This document shows positions 2,774-29,447 of a stretch of 64,000 bases of DNA, piece by piece; within the stretch, counting starts at the first letter, position 1; each line of letters opens with the position of its first letter. The stretch covers positions 124,001 to 188,000 of IMG/VR virus record IMGVR_UViG_3300015261_000002; one strand, written 5' to 3'. A program made the position numbers and the translations under genes. A model generated the notes under the pieces. That model was not told the DNA's origin, ran no database searches, and was given only the letters and a program-made list of their open reading frames with translations.

Positions 2774-5700
2774 TTAAGGCAACAGCTCACCTTGATGAAG
2801 GAATACAAACAAGCCTTCATCCTGAGGGTAGCCCGTGGACATAGGAATGGTCCCACCTTCACGGGTATAGCTCAGCAGCAAGTCGCCCACCATAAACGGT
2901 TGTTCACGAGTGATCGTCAGGATCTGACGGTCGTTGGTAACGATGGTCGCTACCCGCAGCATCGATCCGCTCTTACGAAGCTGTACTGCCGACAACAGAT
3001 ACTTCGGTGTCTCATCCTCGATCGTTGCGTACATGTAGAACGTTTTGTTTTGAGGCGCCGGATCCACATCCCGCAGGTCGATCGTACCACCCTGGATGGA
3101 GTAGGACGTGCCGTTGATCATCATCCGGATGTTGTCTTGGATAAAGAGCAACCAGCCCACTTCAGGATACACCGTCGTAGGGATAATGTAACCGACCCCC
3201 GACTTGGCATGAATCGCCGCACCACCGCCCGTGAACTGATACGGGAACAGGGTTTGGGTAATCAACTTGCCGTCAAAACCATCCTGGTTCGTGATACTGA
3301 GGTCTGTCATCCCCACACCTGGCCACATTACTGCCGCATCGCCCCGATCACGAGCAAGAGAACCCACTGCCAGGTTTTCAATCTGGCTGTTGCCCAGGTT
3401 CAAGTCAAAAGTGGTGATGGGTACTTGACGAGAAGTGGCCACCACATGTTCATAACCCGATGTGATCAAGAGTTTCAGGTAGTTACCATCCCGATAACCT
3501 GTCAGCAACGGCTTGGCGATGTAGATCGTATCCAGCTTTTGCCACTGCTCATACCCTTGCAGTACCGCCCAAGGGCACGTAGAGACATCAGCAGGTGCGG
3601 ACGCCCAGTTATAACTCGTAATGAGGTAAACCCCTGGGTGGTTGGCGTTAGGCGCCTCGACCACAGGAACCCCGATCAGCACACGAGACCGGAAACGAGC
3701 AGTGCCTTCAACAATCCAGTTGACCATAACCACCGAGTGATTCAAACCGCGGAACATCCCGCCGTTCTCTGCGCCCAGATGGTTGATCGTAAAGGACCAT
3801 TTGCTGGCATTGCCTGTGATCGCCCTGATTTGATCGATAACGTTCTGCCGGAAACCATAGAAGCTGGTGGCTGAATAGGTCGCTACCTTGTTGATCGCAT
3901 CGAGTGACTTGGTGTATGTCCGCGGGAAAGAGACCGCCACGTTTCCGCTTGCAGGCGCTCTTAACTGAGGGCACTCCGGCAGATGCTGACTTACCGGATA
4001 GAGACTCGAGTACCCACAGAAGCTTGCCGAACCGCTGCCTTGATCCACACCTGCCGCCGCCAGTTCTACTCCGGTACCTGTAATGCCCAACATGCCGTCG
4101 ACGCGTAGCAGGTTTGTGGAATAGATCTCGGTAGTCAGCGGGCGAGAGTTGATGTTTGGACCCAACGTTAAGTTGTTAACACCGTCCCGTACCGCATAAC
4201 CGCCGCTAACCTTCCGGAAGAACACCTTGCGCCGCAGATCAGGTGTCGACATGTCGGCCGCCCCGAAGACTTCACCGTCCGCTTCAAACGTCATGGACGA
4301 TGTGTACACGCCATTCTTAGTTGCAGGCTGAACAGAAGGGACGTGAAGCACATTGCGTTCAACCTGCGTGGTGTCGCTATCCAACAGTCGCGACATCCAT
4401 TGCTCGGCATTGGTGATGCCTTTCATCTTCAGGATGTTTAACCGACAAGGAAATTCAGCAGCCCCTTCAAACACGCAAGTTGAGACCATTTCACCCGTCG
4501 CCAAAATTACCGAGGACGGTTGCTGATAAGCGACCAACTGGTTGTAAAGATGTCGATATTGACGAATGTACGCTTCGCCGTCACTTACAGTAAAGTCAAG
4601 TGAGATAGGCGGGCTTTTATTCTGTCTGGACATCACACCAGTCGCGGGGTTAAAGATGTGGAACATCTCGGTGATCCCCGGCAGGATCTGAACAAAGAGC
4701 GGGTCGACCGGACGGTCATAGTAGACCATGTGGAAGTATTGAAGAGTATGGAAGTAGTGGTTACCACCTCCGCCAGTTTGTGGCCATGACAGGTTCAGGT
4801 CACGTCGCAAAATCGACAGCCAGGTAATAGGCTGTTGCATCGTGAAACGACCAAAGCGAACGACCTTGCCATTTGCATCCTTGTATACCTGCTGCGCCTG
4901 ATAGTCCAGCACACCGTTGTACTGAACGCCGTCCCAATCCTGGTAGGTCAGTGGAATAGGCTCCCACGCTACCGCAAGACCGTTTACTACGTCGGCCGTC
5001 TTCACACGATAGAAGCGGCTCTTCGGCACACCCTCGGCCGCCACGTACGCTTGCACCAACACCAGGTAGGCACCCATGTGGTGAATGGTAGCCTGGTCAT
5101 TACGACCAAACACTGGGGCGTTACCATATGGCGATCCGAAGAATGCCGTGAGTGCGCTCATGTCGCAGCGGACGTAAGCATGACCGCCTGGATCAAACGA
5201 ACCGTTGGTCAGACAGATAAACCAATCGTTGGTTCCCGCCACACCCGTCATGATGACCTTGTTACCACTGCCCGCAATGATGCGGTCAACATCGATACCG
5301 ATAGCCGTCAGTGCCGGTGGACGGTACTTGTAGTTGCTGTAGGTAACCCGGATGTTGTCCTTGTTGTAGTTCTCAACCACCGAGAAGTACAGCCCTTTAG
5401 TCCGACCATCGTTGTGGTTAGACAACACCATCATCAGACCGCTTGGCTCCAGGCAGATACCTGAGCATTCAGTCTGTTGACCCATGCCTTCAAACGAACC
5501 GCTGATGTTTGGAGGTAGGAAAGACTCACCGCTGTACGAACTGATCGGGAAGATACCCGCCAGCATCGCCTTATCGGTGTCTGGGACGTAGCTCTTGGCA
5601 AGGGCTACCACGCCATGGGGTGTACTGAGAACGTCGCTCCTGACGCCTGCCAGGTCCTCTGCAAGCGTAGCCGTGCGGTAGTTGTCATGGTTACCCATGT

Positions 5701-6370
5701 CGATATCGAACGCATCTGCTTCGTGAGGGTTGTTGTAGTTCTTGTCGTGCGCCTGCAACCGAGTCAACTGTCCATCACGCGCCGCGTACAACTTCTCATA
5801 GGCTGCGTCTACCGCTGCCGTCAGCTTGTCGTCGAAGTCAGGATCCCGAGTACTGCGGATACCTTCCAACTCAGCAAAGAAGTACGTGAAATCATACCAG
5901 TCCATGATTTCAGTTTTGATGTTGTGCGTGTGGTACTCAGGTGGCAGGGTAGGCGGAACGTAAAAGATTTTGCTCCAAGGGATCGGGGTCTTACCCTTGT
6001 GCATCTCGTCCAGCCATTCTTGCAGGTTGTTGCGGGGTACAAACCATGCACCGATGCTCTGGTAGTCGACAGTGATGAAATCGTTTCCTGCCAGGATTGC
6101 ATCAGACACACGGATAAAGGAACAAATAGAACGACCGGTGATCTCGCAGAAAGGAACGAACTCACCTTCAACGTAGTAGTCACGGTCACGGGTCAGAATA
6201 CCGCCCGCTTGGTTACGAACCACGAGCAGTCCGGGTTCGTTAAAGAAAGGGGACCCGTTAGGGATCGTCCAGTTCAAGGTCTTATCCTTGAGTGGGATCT
6301 TCTCGCCGGGGATCGTGTTGACTGGGTTGACACCGCGGATATCAAACACTAAGAGCGGAATGGAATCCAT
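2774..6370 (-). CDS. Tail/baseplate fibre protein (gp131-family-like), about 1198 aa
   Basis: Start probably ATG 6370 (MDSIPLL, SD AAGG). N-terminal P-x-x-SPFF module, NPH...MGNHDNYRTA motif, FLPPNISGSFEG and C-terminal GTIDLRDVDPAPQNKTFY are all shared with 6438..9995. Confidence 0.8.
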   Translation of the reverse strand: MDSIPLLVFDIRGVNPVNTIPGEKIPLKDKTLNWTIPNGSPFFNEPGLLVVRNQAGGILTRDRDYYVEGEFVPFCEITGRSICSFIRVSDAILAGNDFITVDYQSIGAWFVPRNNLQEWLDEMHKGKTPIPWSKIFYVPPTLPPEYHTHNIKTEIMDWYDFTYFFAELEGIRSTRDPDFDDKLTAAVDAAYEKLYAARDGQLTRLQAHDKNYNNPHEADAFDIDMGNHDNYRTATLAEDLAGVRSDVLSTPHGVVALAKSYVPDTDKAMLAGIFPISSYSGESFLPPNISGSFEGMGQQTECSGICLEPSGLMMVLSNHNDGRTKGLYFSVVENYNKDNIRVTYSNYKYRPPALTAIGIDVDRIIAGSGNKVIMTGVAGTNDWFICLTNGSFDPGGHAYVRCDMSALTAFFGSPYGNAPVFGRNDQATIHHMGAYLVLVQAYVAAEGVPKSRFYRVKTADVVNGLAVAWEPIPLTYQDWDGVQYNGVLDYQAQQVYKDANGKVVRFGRFTMQQPITWLSILRRDLNLSWPQTGGGGNHYFHTLQYFHMVYYDRPVDPLFVQILPGITEMFHIFNPATGVMSRQNKSPPISLDFTVSDGEAYIRQYRHLYNQLVAYQQPSSVILATGEMVSTCVFEGAAEFPCRLNILKMKGITNAEQWMSRLLDSDTTQVERNVLHVPSVQPATKNGVYTSSMTFEADGEVFGAADMSTPDLRRKVFFRKVSGGYAVRDGVNNLTLGPNINSRPLTTEIYSTNLLRVDGMLGITGTGVELAAAGVDQGSGSASFCGYSSLYPVSQHLPECPQLRAPASGNVAVSFPRTYTKSLDAINKVATYSATSFYGFRQNVIDQIRAITGNASKWSFTINHLGAENGGMFRGLNHSVVMVNWIVEGTARFRSRVLIGVPVVEAPNANHPGVYLITSYNWASAPADVSTCPWAVLQGYEQWQKLDTIYIAKPLLTGYRDGNYLKLLITSGYEHVVATSRQVPITTFDLNLGNSQIENLAVGSLARDRGDAAVMWPGVGMTDLSITNQDGFDGKLITQTLFPYQFTGGGAAIHAKSGVGYIIPTTVYPEVGWLLFIQDNIRMMINGTSYSIQGGTIDLRDVDPAPQNKTFYMYATIEDETPKYLLSAVQLRKSGSMLRVATIVTNDRQILTITREQPFMVGDLLLSYTREGGTIPMSTGYPQDEGLFVFLHQGELLP

Positions 6371-6386
6371 CACTTTAACCTTATTC

Positions 6387-6426
6387 AAAAGAAAGGAGGC
6401 CAGGGAGGTTAACTCCCCGGCTATCC
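6387..6426 (-). terminator. Intrinsic terminator between fibre genes
   Basis: Minus strand GCCGGGGAG-(5 nt loop)-CUCCCUGGC followed by CUCCUUUCUUUU. Confidence 0.8.
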
Positions 6427-6437
6427 GGACCTAAGTT

Positions 6438-9400
6438 TTAAGGAAGGATTTCACTCTGGTAGAACCAAGGGATTTGTCCTTCCTCGACGACCAAACCAGA
6501 CGAAGCTGGAATGGAGTTACCGCGTTTGAGCTCACTGATGCGGTGGCCGTTCATGGCAATCACGTTGTACCGGTCAATGGTAAGAATCTGACTGGCATTA
6601 GTGGTCACCTTGCCGACCCACAGTTGGTACTGACTTTCCAACCGCTTCAAGGTGGTGATCTCGTACTGAGCTGCACCGTCCCTGAGAAACGCATAAATGT
6701 AAAACGTTTTGTTCTGCGGAGCTGGGTCGATATCACGCAAGTCAACAGAGCCCGCCGGAAGTACAAACGGACGACCGTTGAAGATCACATTGATGTCAGT
6801 TTTGAAGAAGATCACCCAACCGGTTTGTGGATACACCGAACCTACCAGTGCATTGTTAACCGGACCCTGTTGAATCGTCGCCGCGCCACCCGTAATCGGT
6901 CCCCAGGCCCAGGCACGGCCGATACCGTTATCGGGTGTTACGCAGACGGTCGGTACACCCGTACTGGTGTCTTGACGAAGGTTACTGCTCCAACGACGGG
7001 TATTCCGGTCATTGTAGCTGAACTGCCAATCCAACGCGTACGAGTCACCCGGGGTATAGGACATGATCCCTGAACCGAAATACACCTGCAAGTTGTTGCC
7101 ATTCAGGTAGTACCGAACCCGCATCGGTCCGTGGTTCGACGACGCCGTTTCGTAGTTGAGGACAGCACCATAAATACGCGCGGTCGGTTGCAACGGAACA
7201 GCTTGGCCTTGACCCACACCATGGACTTTATCGAGCACAGTGTAACCTGTTACTTGATAACGACCGTTAACAGCAGCATAGGTCGGTTGGATGGTCATAA
7301 ACGTCGAGTACAACGTGTTGATATCCGCCCCGCCTGTCGGCGCGTATTGCACGCACACGCAAACCGGCAACCAACCCGCTCGTGCAGACATTGCCGAATA
7401 GGTTGGGTCGCAGATAACGATCAACTTAAACCGAGCCGCCATGGCCGGGAACTGGATCTCGTTCTTCAGCGCGTTGACAATCGCTTCGGGGTAGAGGACC
7501 TCCAGTGTAGGCACAATCGTTACCGTTCCATCGGCTTCAATGCGGTTGTTGTGGTTCGCCACCAAAAGCACGTCGTTCGGGTTGGCGGTATTGGCTGGCC
7601 AAGCAGTCCCTATGGTAGATCGATCGAAGTCTTTCGTCTGGCTGTTCATACAGAACGCACCATCACCCACATCGACGCCGTAGTTACTCAGCTCGTTGGT
7701 GTTAAACACCACCGTTGCCATACCAATACCCACTGGTGCGTTTACTGGTCGGATATCCCCCGTAAGTGGACGAGACGTCACAGTGCCCAACGGGATGTTG
7801 GTGACCTCCGGCCGTACTGCAAAGCGACCTGAGATCGTTTTGAAGAATGGCTTGGAGTAAATCTGCTGTCTCTGCCCAGCCGCCACGTAGAACTCACCCG
7901 TCGGTACGTAGGCGTGGTGCCTAACGTTAATCGACGACGCCAATGGGCTCGTAAGGATTTCGTTCCAGGAAAAGGTGACGAAGTCCTTAGCCAATCCCCA
8001 CAACCTTGAGATAGTCGTGTGTCGGGTATGAGTCCCCGGAATATTGACCACCAGTGCAGCACGCGGGAAGCCTTCGAAACCAGGAGACCCCGACGCCGCA
8101 TACCGACCGTCTGCCAGCACGTTGCCACCTTGGTTCTTGTAGAAGAAGGTCGCGTTATACATGGCCCGGTTTTGGAGGTACTGTGTAGGAGTACCACCTA
8201 CCACGTTGAAGTCAACAGTGAAGACCGGAGTCGCCGATGTCAAAGACATGACACCCGTGTTTGGATCAAAGTTGTAGTTGATTTCAGGAACATACGTGAA
8301 CGAGTTGTTCAACGTTGCACCCACGATCGACGCGTAAAACGCGATCATGAACTTCATCGCATACTGGCCCGGCACAGTCGGGTTCTCAGCCACCAAGATT
8401 GGCGACGAGCGGTACATACCGATCATGCCGTTCGAGGCTTGCGCAAACGGGAACAAGCACTTCGTTGTGAAACCGTTACCGTCCTTGATGTGGTCACACC
8501 AGCGGAAGTATGGCGAGTTGTTCCACTGCACGCCCTCGGCGTCCATAAACGACACGTTCTGATGAACAGGCGTTACAGGGATTTGCGCTTTAACGTCCGC
8601 CAGGTTTACACGGTAGAAGAACTTGAACCGCATGTCCTGACCCACGTATGGAGCAGCCTGCGGAGTTCCGGTTGAGGCGGTATGAAAAATGTAAATCCAT
8701 GGTCCGATCAACGCAATGCTGAGCCAAGGAAAGATCTCGCTGACACGACGAGACCCTGGGTTGGTAAAGATCGCACCCAGCAACCCGGTCAGGTTAATCG
8801 GGGAGTAAACGTGTTTCGCCGGATCCAGGGAACCGTTGGTTACCCCGATGTAGTACATCTCGCTGTCGCTGTCACCCACGAGGATAACGTCTTCACCACT
8901 GCCCTGAGCAACCGTGTTAACCACCGCCCCGTCGATGTTGATACGAGGGTGGTTGTACTTGTAGCCTGTGTACAGTAACTGCCCGGTAGCCGGATCTTCA
9001 GAATCTGTCAGCACTGAGTAGTACAGGCCTTTGGTACGTCCGTCGAAACGGTTCCACAAGTAGGCCATGGAGCCGTCAGACTCCAGCGTGATAGCAGCGG
9101 TCTCACTGAAACCACCAAAGCCCTCAAACGAACCGTCGATGTTCGCAGGGATGAAGTTCGTGTTACCGAAACGAGAGATCGGCAGCAAGCCGGTCTTCAG
9201 GTACTGCGAACTGTCAAAGCCGTAGTTCTCGATAATGGTCTCCAACCCTTGAGGGGTCAGGTGCATATCGCTACGAGCCTGCAACACGTTACCGCTGTTA
9301 GCGGTTTCGAAGTTGTCGACCTTTTCCAGATTGACTTGGAGTGCCGTCAAACCGTGTTCGTTGTTTGTCCGCATGTGGCGGGTCAAGAACTCGGTCAGCA

Positions 9401-9995
9401 TCTCGCTGTAGACGTTGATGTAGTGCGTCAGGAGGTCGTAGAAGTGGTCGATCCGGATCTGAGTCGGTTCACGACCGTTCGCTGCCTTCATGGCCAGGTA
9501 CAGGTCCATCACTTCCAGCGTATCCTGCCAGCACACAACCGTACGGATCAGGCTGTGGCTGTGGAGACGAGGCGGGAATACCACGGGTTTGTTCTTGAGG
9601 TTTTCCCAGAACACTGGACGATCGTCATTGACAGCCGAAAAGATCATTTGCAGCATGCGGTTGTCAATTAACGAGTATTCCCCAACGACGTGATAATCCA
9701 GCAGCACGTCGGTGAGGTCCGGATCCAGCAGCTCGATAAAGCAGGCCACCGATTGTCCGGCCAGATCAGTGAGGCGAGGCATAATGCTAAAGATCTGGTA
9801 ATGCACCCCCAGGTCAAGCGGTTTACCGTTTGGTGCTTTAACCGTCAGTGTCTTGGTGAAGAACGGCGCATGGTCTGGAACAATGATGCGAGACCAAATA
9901 CCTGCTGGGGTGGACTTAGGCTCATCGTAGATTTTGTTTTCCGGATTAAGCCCTTCAAGGTCCTCTTGATACTCACGGAGAATGGGGAAATGCAT
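6438..9995 (-). CDS. Tail/baseplate fibre protein (gp131-family-like), about 1185 aa
   Basis: Start probably ATG 9995 (MHFPILREY, SD AAGGA). Contains IVPDHAPFF, EHGLTALQVNLEKVDNFETA, FIPANIDGSFEG and GSVDLRDIDPAPQNKTFY; a clear paralog of 2774..6370. Confidence 0.8.
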   Translation of the reverse strand: MHFPILREYQEDLEGLNPENKIYDEPKSTPAGIWSRIIVPDHAPFFTKTLTVKAPNGKPLDLGVHYQIFSIMPRLTDLAGQSVACFIELLDPDLTDVLLDYHVVGEYSLIDNRMLQMIFSAVNDDRPVFWENLKNKPVVFPPRLHSHSLIRTVVCWQDTLEVMDLYLAMKAANGREPTQIRIDHFYDLLTHYINVYSEMLTEFLTRHMRTNNEHGLTALQVNLEKVDNFETANSGNVLQARSDMHLTPQGLETIIENYGFDSSQYLKTGLLPISRFGNTNFIPANIDGSFEGFGGFSETAAITLESDGSMAYLWNRFDGRTKGLYYSVLTDSEDPATGQLLYTGYKYNHPRINIDGAVVNTVAQGSGEDVILVGDSDSEMYYIGVTNGSLDPAKHVYSPINLTGLLGAIFTNPGSRRVSEIFPWLSIALIGPWIYIFHTASTGTPQAAPYVGQDMRFKFFYRVNLADVKAQIPVTPVHQNVSFMDAEGVQWNNSPYFRWCDHIKDGNGFTTKCLFPFAQASNGMIGMYRSSPILVAENPTVPGQYAMKFMIAFYASIVGATLNNSFTYVPEINYNFDPNTGVMSLTSATPVFTVDFNVVGGTPTQYLQNRAMYNATFFYKNQGGNVLADGRYAASGSPGFEGFPRAALVVNIPGTHTRHTTISRLWGLAKDFVTFSWNEILTSPLASSINVRHHAYVPTGEFYVAAGQRQQIYSKPFFKTISGRFAVRPEVTNIPLGTVTSRPLTGDIRPVNAPVGIGMATVVFNTNELSNYGVDVGDGAFCMNSQTKDFDRSTIGTAWPANTANPNDVLLVANHNNRIEADGTVTIVPTLEVLYPEAIVNALKNEIQFPAMAARFKLIVICDPTYSAMSARAGWLPVCVCVQYAPTGGADINTLYSTFMTIQPTYAAVNGRYQVTGYTVLDKVHGVGQGQAVPLQPTARIYGAVLNYETASSNHGPMRVRYYLNGNNLQVYFGSGIMSYTPGDSYALDWQFSYNDRNTRRWSSNLRQDTSTGVPTVCVTPDNGIGRAWAWGPITGGAATIQQGPVNNALVGSVYPQTGWVIFFKTDINVIFNGRPFVLPAGSVDLRDIDPAPQNKTFYIYAFLRDGAAQYEITTLKRLESQYQLWVGKVTTNASQILTIDRYNVIAMNGHRISELKRGNSIPASSGLVVEEGQIPWFYQSEILP

Positions 9996-10005
9996 ATCCA
10001 GTTCC

Positions 10006-10788
10006 TTAGCTGAGATTGAGGGTACCATTTGCCAGTTGGCGGAATGCCTCTTTCAGGACATCCATGGTAATGATGAGGTTCGCGCTGTTGCCGGCAAGGT
10101 CTGTCTTTTCAGCGGCTGCCATGTTTGGGGTCAGCGGCAGACCGATGTCGGATTTCTTCGCCAAGTGGGCTTCGATCAACGGCAACGAGATGTGTTCTTC
10201 CAGCAGCGACTTCAGCGTCACGCTTTGGCTGTTATCGGTGACCGCCAGGATGAGGCTCTTCAGTTGAGTCATCATCTCGTAGTAGTCGTAGGTCTGATCA
10301 GCTGGGTGATCATGCGGATCTGGTGGGAAGTCCACCGGGATGGTAACCGGGTCGATGTCTGCCCAGTCAGCCACACGAGGGGCGTTCACGATGTTGGCCA
10401 CCAGGGTAGCGAACGCCACTTCGTCAAGAACGAAAGGACCACCGATGGTGTCGTACTTAGGCATCAGTACATCGCCGGCCATAGGGCGCAGCATGATGAT
10501 CGAACCGAAGCAGTTACGGTTGTAGCCAGGAACCGCTGCACCATTCTGGTTGATGTAACCACCGATGAAACGATCAAAGGCATGACCGAAGCAGTAGTCG
10601 TAACCGAGGATCAAAGGATCAGCGCTGCCCTGACGATACAGTTCGAAGTTGCGGCTGAAGAAGGGGGCTGCACGGGGTACGAATTCGACACGGCCGCTTG
10701 CGAAGTCAGCGGTCTTAATGGTCTCCGTGGTGATACGGTTGTTGATGTTTTGTTGGAAGGGGTTCCATGCGTAAACAATGTTGGCCAT
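10006..10788 (-). CDS. Short fibre paralog (N-terminal anchor module only), probable fibre adaptor
   Basis: 260 aa. FVPRAAPFF module and AHLAKKSDIGLPLTPNMAAA match the fibre N-terminal modules; there is no distal domain. Confidence 0.65.
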   Translation of the reverse strand: MANIVYAWNPFQQNINNRITTETIKTADFASGRVEFVPRAAPFFSRNFELYRQGSADPLILGYDYCFGHAFDRFIGGYINQNGAAVPGYNRNCFGSIIMLRPMAGDVLMPKYDTIGGPFVLDEVAFATLVANIVNAPRVADWADIDPVTIPVDFPPDPHDHPADQTYDYYEMMTQLKSLILAVTDNSQSVTLKSLLEEHISLPLIEAHLAKKSDIGLPLTPNMAAAEKTDLAGNSANLIITMDVLKEAFRQLANGTLNLS

Positions 10789-21584: not shown

Positions 21585-21607
21585 ATAGCAAAAAAGAAAG
21601 AACCATA

Positions 21608-21656
21608 GCTAACCCTCCTAGCCTTTGCGGGCTAGGAGGGTTAGCCTTATGGCTGC
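21608..21656. terminator. Bidirectional terminator
   Basis: 16-bp perfect stem GCTAACCCTCCTAGCC / GGCTAGGAGGGTTAGC. Followed by TTATGGCTGC on the plus strand and by a U-rich run on the minus strand. Confidence 0.85.
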
Positions 21657-22277
21657 TTACTGCTGATCAGCAGCTTGTTCTGGTGCTGGTTCTTCAGCAA
21701 CTTCTTTCGCAGGAGTAACCGACGCACGCAGACGATCGGTCATTGCAACGACTGCCAGCAGAAGGCTTTCACCACGACCGGCGCTCAGGAGCTCTTCCAG
21801 TTGCTCGAAGGTGCTGACGGCATTGAAGCCAGCGGCGAGTTCTTCGTCGGTAGGACCGGCAGCCGGCACTTCCACTTCAACGCGCTTTTCAACGGGTTCG
21901 ATGGTCGAAGCCACGGCGGTCAGTACGCGGGACTTCATTTCACCCAGGGCGTCGGCCAGTTCGTTGCCAGCAGCCAGAGGTGCAGCTTCGGTCAGCAGGT
22001 CGGCGAAGTGGTTGGTCAGGGTGTCCAGGTCAGTGACCGTGGAAACGTTGTTCATGGCCGCTTCAGGGGTCATGCGTGCCGCTTCAGGTGCGGCTTCCAC
22101 CACAGGCTTGCCGGTGGCTGCGATCAGACGCTCTTTGATCAGGGAGACCAGACCGTCGCCGCTCGGGCAAGGGTCGTTCGCGTAACGCTGAGGGCGTGGA
22201 TAAACCTGCGTGAGGCGATGGTCGGCCAGCAGGTTCGCTACGTCGCCATTGGTGAGATGTGGGTAAGTACTAGACAT
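21657..22277 (-). CDS. Hypothetical protein, probably abundant; N-terminal module shared with 22381..22971
   Basis: 206 aa, Ala/Glu-rich, strong codon bias like the capsid gene; internal repeat NNVSTVTDLDTL / NAVSTFEQLEEL. Confidence 0.75.
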   Translation of the reverse strand: MSSTYPHLTNGDVANLLADHRLTQVYPRPQRYANDPCPSGDGLVSLIKERLIAATGKPVVEAAPEAARMTPEAAMNNVSTVTDLDTLTNHFADLLTEAAPLAAGNELADALGEMKSRVLTAVASTIEPVEKRVEVEVPAAGPTDEELAAGFNAVSTFEQLEELLSAGRGESLLLAVVAMTDRLRASVTPAKEVAEEPAPEQAADQQ

Positions 22278-22327
22278 CGTTTCTCTCTCTTTTGGTTACG
22301 GATGGGTTTCTACAAAGGATGTTAACA

Positions 22328-22374
22328 GGACAAAAAAATAAAAAGATGTTACCTGTGCCGTGTTACCGGCACAG
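22328..22374 (-). terminator. Intrinsic terminator in the accessory cassette
   Basis: CUGUGCCG stem, then a long U-tract ending UUUUUUGUCC. Confidence 0.75.
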
Positions 22375-22380
22375 TGTCTA

Positions 22381-22971
22381 CTAAATAACTTCGTGCAGTT
22401 CACTTCTTCTTGCCAGAAAGCAAAAGAAAGGTGTGAGACTTCGAGCCGTTCGTTCTTTGTTGATTTCCGCAAGGACCTGATTATCTTCTTTGGGGAAAAC
22501 GACACAGCAGTCACTAGGCAGCAGTGACGTTCTCGCAAGAGTATCGATACTGGTCGTCAGGAAGGTAGAGAACAGGTGTGACGCATCGTCACGGGAAGGC
22601 CAGGAACTAGGAAGGTTGCCATCCACTACCAATTTGTCATACAACGCTTCAAATGTATTGCGCATTTGATCAGGTGTGGTTGTAAACATCTTGTCGGGGA
22701 ATGGCATGATTTGTGGTAACGAGAACGACAACAGATCCGGATTGGGGTTACGTCGCTCTTTCGCGTCATCCCAACTCAAGTTAGGTCCCGACTTCTTCAG
22801 GCGACGCTGGATCTCGTAGACAAGTTCCAGACCGGTCGGTATTTCAATCCCCTCGAACTCCTTAGGAGGATTCTCGAAGTTGATCACACGATAACCGCCT
22901 AGCAAGATTGCCAGGTCTTCGTCGGTCAGGTGTTTGTAGCATTTCGGCGGTACGTCAGTAATGTCGGTCAT
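22381..22971 (-). CDS. Hypothetical protein; N-terminal module shared with 21657..22277
   Basis: 196 aa, SD GGAG; YKHLTDEDLAILL...PTGLELVYEIQRRL. Confidence 0.7.
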   Translation of the reverse strand: MTDITDVPPKCYKHLTDEDLAILLGGYRVINFENPPKEFEGIEIPTGLELVYEIQRRLKKSGPNLSWDDAKERRNPNPDLLSFSLPQIMPFPDKMFTTTPDQMRNTFEALYDKLVVDGNLPSSWPSRDDASHLFSTFLTTSIDTLARTSLLPSDCCVVFPKEDNQVLAEINKERTARSLTPFFCFLARRSELHEVI

Positions 22972-22980
22972 GCTATTCTC

Positions 22981-23343
22981 CTAATGAAGAGTAGGTGATT
23001 GAGGTGGGTTGTTGGCCGAGAAAATATAGACAGGGTCTGCGAGCAGGCTGTCGATCGGTTTAAGCAGGATTACCCAGTCTTTGAAGGGCTGATGTCTGTA
23101 GAAGCTTGCAAAGCTCCTGGGCAGCGTCTCAGGCGCTCCTACATAGAGAAACGCGTGGTAGTGAAGTAAAGTGTTAGCAAAGTCGTCTTCACTTACTACA
23201 ATGCGCAGTTCAGTGATAATATCCTTCGACTCACGGATACCTTCAGGCCAACCATCAACTACAATTGTCCCGGTAATGTAATCCAGGATTTGTTCAATGA
23301 TCTCCATCCCCATGAGTTTGGGATGGTGCAGTTTAAGCAACAT
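22981..23343 (-). CDS. Hypothetical protein
   Basis: 120 aa, SD GAGGA, in the accessory cassette. Confidence 0.6.
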   Translation of the reverse strand: MLLKLHHPKLMGMEIIEQILDYITGTIVVDGWPEGIRESKDIITELRIVVSEDDFANTLLHYHAFLYVGAPETLPRSFASFYRHQPFKDWVILLKPIDSLLADPVYIFSANNPPQSPTLH

Positions 23344-29349: not shown

Positions 29350-29447
29350 GGTGGGAACCTCTATCGACTTCCTTAAAAGCCTATTTGTAATACGTAGTCT
29401 GCTCTAATAATGTAGGTTTAAAAAATTATAACAAGAATACAAAATCC

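What the first reader, a model, noticed from the sequence alone, without database searches (positions are those of the whole stretch)
22125..22938. Two adjacent accessory proteins share a 47-aa N-terminal module but have unrelated C-termini
An ungapped alignment of YPHLTNGDVANLLADHRLTQVYPRPQRYANDPCPSGDGLVSLIKERL (21657 gene) with YKHLTDEDLAILLGGYRVINFENPPKEFEGIEIPTGLELVYEIQRRL (22381 gene) gives 17/47 identities (YxHLTxxDxAxLL...PxGxxLVxxIxxRL). After it, one protein continues as an Ala/Glu-rich repeated helical region and the other as a different globular domain. Inference: a portable docking, targeting or hetero-oligomerisation tag, for example for the phage nucleus or a host complex.
Basis: seen in the sequence. 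Interest (0 to 1): 0.7.

Follow-up and report, generated by a model that had tools for sequence, protein, structure and literature searches.

The report
Shared docking-like domain on phage proteins
Two neighbouring genes of an uncultured giant phage share a real, previously undescribed 55-residue domain that this phage lineage has attached to many unrelated proteins; it is probably a common attachment handle, but its partner is unknown.

Summary
Gene A (21657-22277, minus strand, 206 aa) and gene B (22381-22971, minus strand, 196 aa) share 17 of 47 residues without gaps. This scores z 7.8, with 0 of 200,000 shuffles as good, BLASTP E 7e-6 and family profile comparison E 6e-7. The rest of the two proteins is unrelated.

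The genome is a 224.7-kb rhizosphere phage related to Pseudomonas phage EL, a chimallivirus.

The module is not just a pairwise oddity. A third protein in the genome (C, 629 aa) carries it internally. Each of four complete related genomes has exactly three copies. A profile search of 1.84 billion proteins found about 48 true clusters. In these the module is N-terminal, internal, C-terminal or stand-alone, on at least five groups of partners unrelated by profile. EL has a short stand-alone form, gp72. PhiKZ, OBP, RisingSun and three other chimalliviruses have none.

The module is better conserved than its partners (B family 86% against 43%). It is predicted as helix, Pro-rich loop, helix, is near neutral in charge, and matches no Pfam, PHROG or PDB entry.

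Best reading: a new portable protein-docking domain that takes varied payloads to one phage-made partner. The partner is unidentified. Targeting to the phage nucleus, targeting to the capsid and hetero-oligomerisation all remain untested.

The parts
21657..22277 (-). Gene A, 206 aa: module (residues 1-56), Pro/Ala/Glu linker, then an acidic Ala/Glu-rich helical region (pI 4.2).
   Evidence: ORF. Family of 10 metagenomic relatives. AF2 model. Composition. An A-like payload occupies the same last position of the slot in a more distant 232-kb phage.
22110..22277 (-). Module copy in A (residues 1-56).
   Evidence: Pairwise identity within the A family is 0.73 in the module against 0.58 in the rest.
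22381..22971 (-). Gene B, 196 aa: module (residues 8-63, nearly invariant to residue 68), linker, then a compact alpha/beta domain (residues 81-196). GGAG ribosome-binding site 7 nt upstream of the ATG.
   Evidence: ORF. Family of 14. AF2 model (C-terminal domain pLDDT 80-91). Sequence. No structural match in BFVD, PDB, VIA-wide, the Atlas or AFDB.
22783..22950 (-). Module copy in B (residues 8-63).
   Evidence: Pairwise identity within the B family is 0.86 in the module against 0.43 in the rest.
22332..22374 (-). Hairpin with an 8-bp stem and 6-nt loop (22353-22374), followed by a T-rich run (22332-22346), between B's stop and A's start. Possibly a partial terminator.
   Evidence: Read directly from the sequence. 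The scan did not flag it, because the T-run starts 6-7 nt after the stem.
21607..21646 (-). Hairpin with a 17-bp stem just after A's stop, between A and the convergent 1008-aa virion-protein gene. Likely a terminator.
22981..23343 (-). 120-aa gene that ends 9 nt before B's start. A homologous 118-aa gene sits in the same way before the first module gene of the 232-kb relative (L015). It may be a module-less relative of the alpha/beta payload domain.
   Evidence: hhalign against the C-like C-terminal domain gives only 44%, E 2e-4, so this is a lead only.
29407..29425 (-). EL-type promoter motif, one mismatch from the sites annotated in EL. It lies at the head of the co-directional gene series 378 aa, 553 aa (polymerase-like), 775 aa, 127 aa, 87 aa, 120 aa, B, A.
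   Evidence: There are six copies in the genome, all on the minus strand; another lies two genes upstream of protein C.

Best explanation
A and B share a genuine, self-contained domain of about 55 residues. Its layout is an aromatic residue, then a His-Leu-(Ser/Thr)-Asn helix cap, helix 1, a Leu-Thr-Gln-Val-like strand, a Pro-rich loop of about 15-20 residues that ends Pro-x-Gly, and helix 2 ending in Arg-Leu.

The domain family is undescribed and confined to EL-like chimalliviruses. Over a long period it has been joined to many unrelated 'payload' domains.

Most likely mechanism (inferred, not shown): it is a protein-protein docking domain that brings its varied, fast-evolving payloads to one common partner encoded by the phage. 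In this genome that means three proteins: A, B, and the 629-aa protein C at genome 105497-107383.

Because A and B lie at the end of a gene series that starts next to the major capsid gene, I place the action late in infection (inferred). The partner is not identified.
For: The domain is real and autonomous.
- A profile of the A and B modules finds a third copy inside protein C (E 1e-3), and C's orthologue in a relative scores 31.6 bits.
- Four complete genomes each hold exactly three copies.
- A search of 1.84 billion proteins gives 54 hits. Three of the six multi-stretch hits were inspected and are tandem-repeat artefacts; the other three look the same. That leaves about 48 true clusters.
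- Stand-alone forms of 73-85 aa exist. EL gp72, 81 aa, is 96-100% conserved in ten isolates.

The domain is shuffled.
- The partners fall into 15 BLAST clusters once the module is masked.
- By profile comparison only the C-like, P54-like and P37-like partners are related to one another. The A-like, B-like, P41-like and P63-like partners are unrelated.

The domain is under stronger constraint than its payloads.
- Pairwise identity is 0.86 against 0.43 in the B family and 0.73 against 0.58 in the A family.
- A and B as wholes are 45-75% identical between genomes, while neighbouring genes are 69-97% identical, mostly 80% or more.

The fusions are old. The module tree follows the partner families (12 label changes against 33.9 when shuffled), with a deep split between the internal type and the N-terminal type.

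It looks like a tethered binding unit.
- In C-like and P54-like proteins it lies between G/P/Q/N/F/Y/M-rich, charge-poor linkers (0.53-0.58 against a background of 0.30).
- Its pLDDT is low (45-65) even though two helices are predicted, which fits folding on binding.

Protein binding is more likely than DNA binding: the modules have pI 5.4-6.7.

A phage-made partner is more likely than a host one. The module travels with one phage lineage found in rhizosphere soil, a food metagenome and clinical P. aeruginosa phages.

Late or structural context.
- In three lineages the module genes occupy the same slot, between the 775/786-aa gene and the convergent phrog_3004 virion protein, downstream of the capsid gene.
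- The same rare promoter motif heads the gene series that contains A and B and the series that contains C.
Against: - No partner was found, and no experiment exists for any member.
- The A+B co-fold returned 'no answer'.
- Low pLDDT may only reflect shallow alignments.
- Within each family the loop is nearly invariant, but it differs between families. So each family might have its own partner rather than a common one.
- Protein C lies among small early-looking accessory genes (ligase, RNase H, Acb1), not among structural genes.
- The timing class of the promoter motif is unknown.
- EL gp72 and the EL genes in the slot are annotated 'hypothetical', not 'virion structural'.
Confidence: 0.5

Rival explanations
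1. Capsid-targeting handle. The module directs its payloads into the procapsid so that they are packaged and later ejected, like the T4 capsid targeting sequence on its diverse internal proteins or the long propeptides of giant-phage inner head proteins. This is a special case of docking.
For: - The slot lies between the capsid gene cluster and virion structural genes in three lineages.
- The payloads are fast-evolving and variable while the handle is conserved, as in the T4 internal proteins (PMC3012670).
- Giant phages use long N-terminal propeptides that are presumed to target proteins to the head (PMC5694885).
- A is acidic, Ala/Glu-rich and helical, like scaffold or internal proteins.
Against: - No family has a conserved [S/A/G]-x-E protease motif after the module.
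- The module is internal in C-like proteins.
- EL gp72 is not annotated as a virion protein.
- Protein C sits in a non-structural gene array.
Confidence: 0.2
2. Handle for the phage nucleus. The module anchors its payloads to the chimallin shell or to the import machinery. The C-like proteins, with their FG/MG-like low-complexity linkers, would sit at or in the shell.
For: - The nearest named relatives belong to Elvirus and Risingsunvirus, both genera of Chimalliviridae.
- The linkers around the module in C-like and P54-like proteins are aromatic, Gly/Met/Asn/Gln/Pro-rich and charge-poor.
Against: - There are only three carriers per genome.
- The module is absent from RisingSun, phiKZ, OBP, Miami, FishSpeaker and AerS_266, although the shell and import are core functions.
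- A review reports selection of cargo by surface residues, not by a terminal signal (PMC12908238).
- Chimallin was not identified in this genome here.
Confidence: 0.12
3. Oligomerisation domain. The modules of A, B and C bind each other and assemble one hetero-complex.
For: - There are exactly three copies, one of each family, in all four complete genomes of the clade.
- Each family keeps its own nearly invariant loop.
Against: - EL has a single stand-alone copy, and other lineages carry two to four in different combinations.
- The A+B co-fold gave no support, though this does not count against binding.
Confidence: 0.12
4. Host-factor binder. The module docks its payloads onto a conserved host protein or complex.
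For: - The payloads are fast-evolving accessory genes of variable repertoire, typical of host-interaction genes.
- Stand-alone small forms could act as inhibitors.
Against: - The module persists in phages from different habitats, and probably different hosts, and is limited to one phage lineage.
- No host homologue or mimic was detected: the profile search found no cellular protein with a single clean match.
Confidence: 0.15
5. Nucleic-acid binder of the helix-extended-helix type (SAP/LEM/HeH-like), with a lengthened linker.
For: - By eye, the pattern L-S/T-N-x-E/D-L-x-x-L-L ... G-x-x-L-x-x-I-x-x-R-L recalls SAP and LEM motifs. This comparison rests on my own knowledge of those motifs, so it is a lead only.
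- Short-loop variants (EL gp72 and a 78-aa protein in L017) come closer to that length.
- One short-loop variant gives a weak match to half of the LEM model (E 0.03-0.2, below the cut-off).
Against: - The SAP and LEM HMMs do not hit A, B or C, even at E 10 per genome.
- The module profile gives no PDB sequence hit at E 10 and no Pfam hit.
- The modules have pI 5.4-6.7.
- Weak LEM and SAP matches also turn up in nearly all the control genomes.
Confidence: 0.08

Closest known systems
T4 capsid targeting sequence (CTS) on the internal proteins IPI-III and Alt
   Same: A conserved short N-terminal handle is shared by otherwise diverse, fast-evolving proteins encoded in a variable locus beside the head genes. 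The handle alone decides where the payload goes (PMC3012670; PMC5694885).
   Different: The CTS is a 10-20-residue peptide that the prohead protease cuts off. Here the unit is a 55-residue predicted helix-loop-helix with no conserved cleavage motif after it. It is also found internally, at the C-terminus and alone. Encapsidation is unproven.
Long N-terminal propeptides of giant-phage inner head and ejection proteins (SPN3US, phiKZ)
   Same: They belong to the same broad phage group, are extensions of tens to over 100 residues presumed to target proteins into the prohead, and occur on paralogous families (PMC5694885).
   Different: Those proteins belong to families such as pfam12699 and are cleaved at A/S-x-E. 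A, B and C match no Pfam or PHROG family, and the module is absent from phiKZ.
SAP / LEM / HeH helix-extended-helix motifs
   Same: All have two short amphipathic helices joined by an extended segment, a similar pattern of conserved Leu residues with an Arg-Leu or Lys-Leu end, and frequent occurrence as a small terminal module on varied proteins.
   Different: The linker is about 15-20 residues longer, the charge is neutral to acidic, and there is no HMM-level match. The fold is not confidently predicted.
Pseudomonas phage EL gp72 (YP_418105.1), hypothetical protein
   Same: It is the only member in a cultured phage: an 81-aa stand-alone short-loop form of the module, conserved in ten EL-like isolates.
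   Different: Its loop is 7 residues shorter, it carries no payload, it lies elsewhere in the genome (upstream of the helicase and capsid genes), and it is uncharacterised.
Docking or trafficking domains of modular systems (dockerin-type handles, N-terminal trafficking domains of polymorphic toxins)
   Same: The logic is the same: one conserved handle, many interchangeable payloads, and flexible linkers.
   Different: There is no sequence or structural relationship, and here the receptor is unknown.

Membership tests
SAP / LEM / HeH clan | Sequence match to the family HMMs (PF02037 SAP, PF03020 LEM) | tested here: not met
   Neither HMM hits A, B or C in five genomes at E up to 10. Scanning 50 module sequences against Pfam finds no HeH-clan family. 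One short-loop variant gives a match to half of the LEM model that is below the cut-off.
SAP / LEM / HeH clan | Helix-extended-helix fold of about 35-40 residues | tested here: inconclusive
   AF2 predicts two helices (B residues 17-24 and 47-61; A residues 10-21 and 41-55) joined by a loop of about 20 residues, at pLDDT 45-65. The profile has no PDB sequence match.
SAP / LEM / HeH clan | Basic surface for binding DNA (SAP and LEM-like members) | tested here: not met
   The modules have pI 6.7 (A), 5.8 (B) and 5.4 (C).
T4-type capsid targeting sequence or giant-phage head propeptide | N-terminal position | tested here: inconclusive
   The module is N-terminal in the A-like, B-like, most P41-like and P63-like families and in several singletons. 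It is internal in the C-like, P54-like and most P37-like families, and C-terminal in one protein.
T4-type capsid targeting sequence or giant-phage head propeptide | Prohead-protease cleavage motif ([S/A/G]-x-E) directly after the handle | tested here: not met
   No column after the module carries the motif in at least 70% of any family. The specificity of the EL-clade protease is unknown.
T4-type capsid targeting sequence or giant-phage head propeptide | The carrier protein is present in the prohead or virion | not testable with these tools
   No proteome exists for this uncultured phage. EL gp72 is annotated 'hypothetical', not 'virion structural'.
Chimallivirus nuclear-import cargo signal | Present on the set of proteins that must enter the phage nucleus, across the family | tested here: not met
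   There are three carriers per genome and none in six other chimalliviruses. The literature reports that no terminal signal is used (PMC12908238).
Any curated protein family (Pfam-A, PHROGs) | HMM match over the curated threshold | tested here: not met
   A, B, C, 45 full-length carriers and 50 isolated modules have no significant family match.

The most novel reading that the evidence does not exclude
The module is a transferable address that is sufficient on its own to send any fused cargo to one defined structure of the infected cell: the procapsid interior, or a site on the phage-nucleus shell. In the shell version, the C-like carriers, with their FG/MG-like low-complexity linkers, would form a selective, nucleoporin-like element there. 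Either version would give the first portable localisation domain known for a chimallivirus lineage.
Probability: 0.15. Interest if true: 0.8.

Novelty: new member of a known kind. Interest (0 to 1): 0.5.

Why it matters
Most genes of giant phages have no known function. This work defines a domain family with a clear signature and about 48 clusters of carriers. It also links three orphan genes in each genome, and a conserved accessory slot beside the head genes, to one shared and so far unknown partner.

If the partner is found, the roles of many orphan payloads become testable at once. The module could then serve as a tag for delivering cargo to a defined site in cells infected by EL-like phages. 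A cultured entry point exists: EL gp72 in P. aeruginosa.

If the module proves to be only a generic interaction motif, the result is a useful annotation (a new domain of unknown function) rather than new biology.

Tried and rejected
- **Fourth copy in the genome (111814-112020, plus strand).** It scored E 0.012 with the two-sequence profile and shares 16/47 identities with A by my hand count from the sequence. The broader profiles weaken it to E 0.05-0.5, it lacks the invariant Pro and Arg, and it is the antisense frame of a conserved 55-aa gene. The Karlin-Altschul estimate is about 0.04, my own calculation from the score. Treated as chance.
- **tblastn of A, B and C against 50,697 phage records.** No match.
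- **Structure searches with the B model** (BFVD, PDB, VIA-wide, ESM Atlas, AFDB clusters). Nothing above background; the best Z was 4.7.
- **ESM Atlas feature searches.** No lead; scores were 0.71 or lower.
- **A+B co-fold.** 'No answer'; not used as evidence.
- **SAP and LEM membership.** Not met.
- **Link to the phage chaperonin.** The genome has an EL-type chaperonin, but so does RisingSun, which lacks the module. Rejected.
- **Conserved protease site after the module.** Absent.
- **Small neighbouring genes (87 aa, 120 aa, 127 aa) as co-occurring partners.** Their distribution does not track the module cleanly.
- **Six multi-stretch hits of the profile search.** Three were inspected and are translations of tandem repeats.
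- **RNA data.** Only the source rhizosphere DNA run was found.

Full report
**What is there**

The window is bases 124001-188000 of a single 224,747-bp contig with 51.6% GC and direct terminal repeats. It was assembled from a rhizosphere metagenome.

The neighbouring 775-aa protein is 39% identical to Pseudomonas phage EL gp81 and 30% identical to its Erwinia phage RisingSun homologue. Elvirus and Risingsunvirus are genera of Chimalliviridae. The window also encodes a phiKZ-type major head protein, a DnaB-like helicase, a polymerase-like subunit and virion proteins. The genome carries an EL-type chaperonin.

Gene A (21657..22277, minus strand, 206 aa) and gene B (22381..22971, minus strand, 196 aa) are the last two genes of a co-directional series. 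They converge on a 1008-aa virion structural gene, phrog_3004.

- BLASTP aligns A 4-51 with B 11-58 without gaps: 17/48 identities, E 7e-6, and nothing else.
None of 200,000 shuffles reaches that score or 17 identities.
- Both proteins have metagenomic families, 10 sequences for A and 14 for B. Comparing the family profiles gives 92% probability and E 6e-7 over 54 columns only.
- After the module the families are unrelated (hhalign 0.8%).
- AF2 gives B a confident alpha/beta domain at residues 81-196 and gives A low-confidence helices.

**It is a domain family, not a pairwise coincidence**

A profile of the two modules found a third copy in the same genome. It lies inside a 629-aa protein, C (genome 105497-107383, minus strand, outside the window), at residues about 377-432. 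C's orthologue in a related genome matches much more clearly, at 31.6 bits.

Four complete related genomes each hold exactly three copies, one each of A, B and C.

A three-family profile searched against 1.84 billion representative proteins returned 54 hits at E 1e-3 or better. Six of them are multi-stretch hits. Three of these were inspected and are tandem-repeat artefacts. The remaining hits each carry one module:

- at the N-terminus in A-like, B-like and several other families;
- internally in C-like families;
- at the C-terminus in one protein;
- alone, in proteins of 73-85 aa.

All come from unnamed metagenomic contigs of up to 219-233 kb. Those examined have phiKZ-type capsid genes.

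With the module masked, the carriers form 15 BLAST clusters. By profile comparison the C-like, P54-like and P37-like payloads are distantly related. The A-like, B-like, P41-like and P63-like payloads are not related to these or to each other.

A 50-sequence alignment (A4) has invariant Pro38, Leu43 and Leu51, and nearly invariant Leu17, Gly40 and Arg50 (A numbering).

**Distribution**

EL has one short-loop stand-alone form, gp72 (81 aa; E 8e-5 per genome). It is 96-100% conserved in ten EL-like isolates and is always annotated 'hypothetical'. The same profile finds nothing in RisingSun, phiKZ, OBP, Miami, FishSpeaker or AerS_266.

**Evolutionary behaviour**

- Gene order around A and B is the same in all four complete genomes. 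A and B are 45-75% identical between genomes, while their neighbours are 69-97% identical, mostly 80% or more.
- Within the families the module is the conserved part: 0.86 against 0.43 in B, and 0.73 against 0.58 in A.
- A tree of the modules follows the payload families (12 label changes against 33.9 when shuffled). It splits deeply into an internal type and an N-terminal type, so the fusions are old.
- The same slot holds module genes in two further lineages. The slot lies between the 775/786-aa gene and the convergent virion gene. A 232-kb phage from a food metagenome has three module genes there, including an A-like one in the same last position. A 219-kb phage has two, including a gp72-like 78-aa protein.

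**Physical nature**

The module is predicted as helix, a loop of about 20 residues, then helix, at pLDDT 45-65. Its pI is 5.4-6.7. In C-like and P54-like proteins it is an island between linkers that are G/P/Q/N/F/Y/M-rich and charge-poor.

It has no Pfam, PHROG or PDB-sequence match, and neither does any full-length carrier. By eye it resembles SAP and LEM motifs, but the SAP and LEM HMMs do not hit it.

**Expression context**

The EL-type promoter motif occurs six times in the genome, always on the minus strand.

- One copy (window 29407-29425) heads the series 378 aa, 553 aa, 775 aa, 127 aa, 87 aa, 120 aa, B, A.
- Another copy lies two genes upstream of C.

Hairpins followed by T-runs lie after the 87-aa gene, between B and A, and after A.

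**Interpretation**

- Shown: the domain is real, autonomous, ancient, lineage-restricted and shuffled, and it is more constrained than its payloads.
- Inferred: it docks the payloads onto a common partner that travels with the phage, probably late in infection (confidence about 0.5).

Capsid targeting in the manner of the T4 CTS is the most attractive specific version. However, no conserved protease site follows the module, and there are no virion data.

A general address for the phage nucleus is unlikely. Carriers are few, the module is absent from most chimalliviruses, and published work points to surface-patch recognition. A lineage-specific shell anchor is not excluded.

Hetero-oligomerisation is untested: the co-fold gave no answer. 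DNA binding is disfavoured by charge.

**Verdict**

This is a new domain family of a familiar kind. Interest is moderate, and EL gp72 offers a tractable way to test it by experiment.

Noticed in passing
window 2774-6388 (-) and 6438-10028 (-): Two tandem paralogous proteins of about 1200 aa. Both match phrog_3573 over most of their length and a virion-structural or minor-tail family at the N-terminus. This looks like a duplicated large virion or tail component.
   Followed up: partly
own genome 105497-107383 (-), outside the window (L003:5497-7383): Protein C (629 aa) and its relatives carry the module between low-complexity linkers with FG/MG-like motifs. Only the module and the C-terminal 200 aa or so are conserved between genomes; the N-terminal domains differ.
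   Followed up: partly
own genome 111386-111835 (-), outside the window (L003:11386-11835): A 149-aa gene whose homologue in a relative carries the Pfam family Acb1 (PF23474, anti-CBASS nuclease). It lies in the same array of accessory genes as C, near ligase, RNase H, DHH and acetyltransferase genes.
   Followed up: no
own genome 111814-112020 (+), outside the window: The antisense frame of a conserved 55-aa gene shares 16/47 identities with A's module (my hand count; BLOSUM62 score 55, while the next-best background score is 25). I judged it chance (Karlin-Altschul E about 0.04; the invariant residues are missing), but it is an odd coincidence.
   Followed up: yes
own genome 86702-87895 (-), outside the window: An EL-type phage chaperonin (PF00118) in a 617-aa frame. 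It is also present in two relatives, EL and RisingSun. A copy of the EL-type promoter motif lies just upstream, at 88031-88047.
   Followed up: partly
window 29407-29425 (-) and five other sites in the genome: The motif TTT[TCGA]AAACCTACATTAT, almost identical to the 'putative phage promoter' sites annotated in EL, occurs only six times in the genome and always on the minus strand. One site is in the same place as in EL, after the major head gene.
   Followed up: partly
window 22981-23343 (-): A 120-aa gene ends 9 nt before B. Its homologue sits in the same way before the first module gene of a distant relative. It is weakly similar (hhalign 44%) to the C-terminal alpha/beta domain of C-like proteins, so it may be a module-less payload.
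   Followed up: partly
window 21657-22109 (-), A residues 57-206: The two helical halves of A are weakly similar at the profile level (hhalign 69%, E 4e-5, 54 columns) but not by BLASTP. This may be an old internal duplication.
   Followed up: yes
L021 (Pseudomonas phage vB_PQ1, PQ516283.1): In this EL-like record the major head, polymerase and gp81-like genes are split into many short CDS. It looks like an assembly full of frameshifts rather than real gene decay.
   Followed up: no
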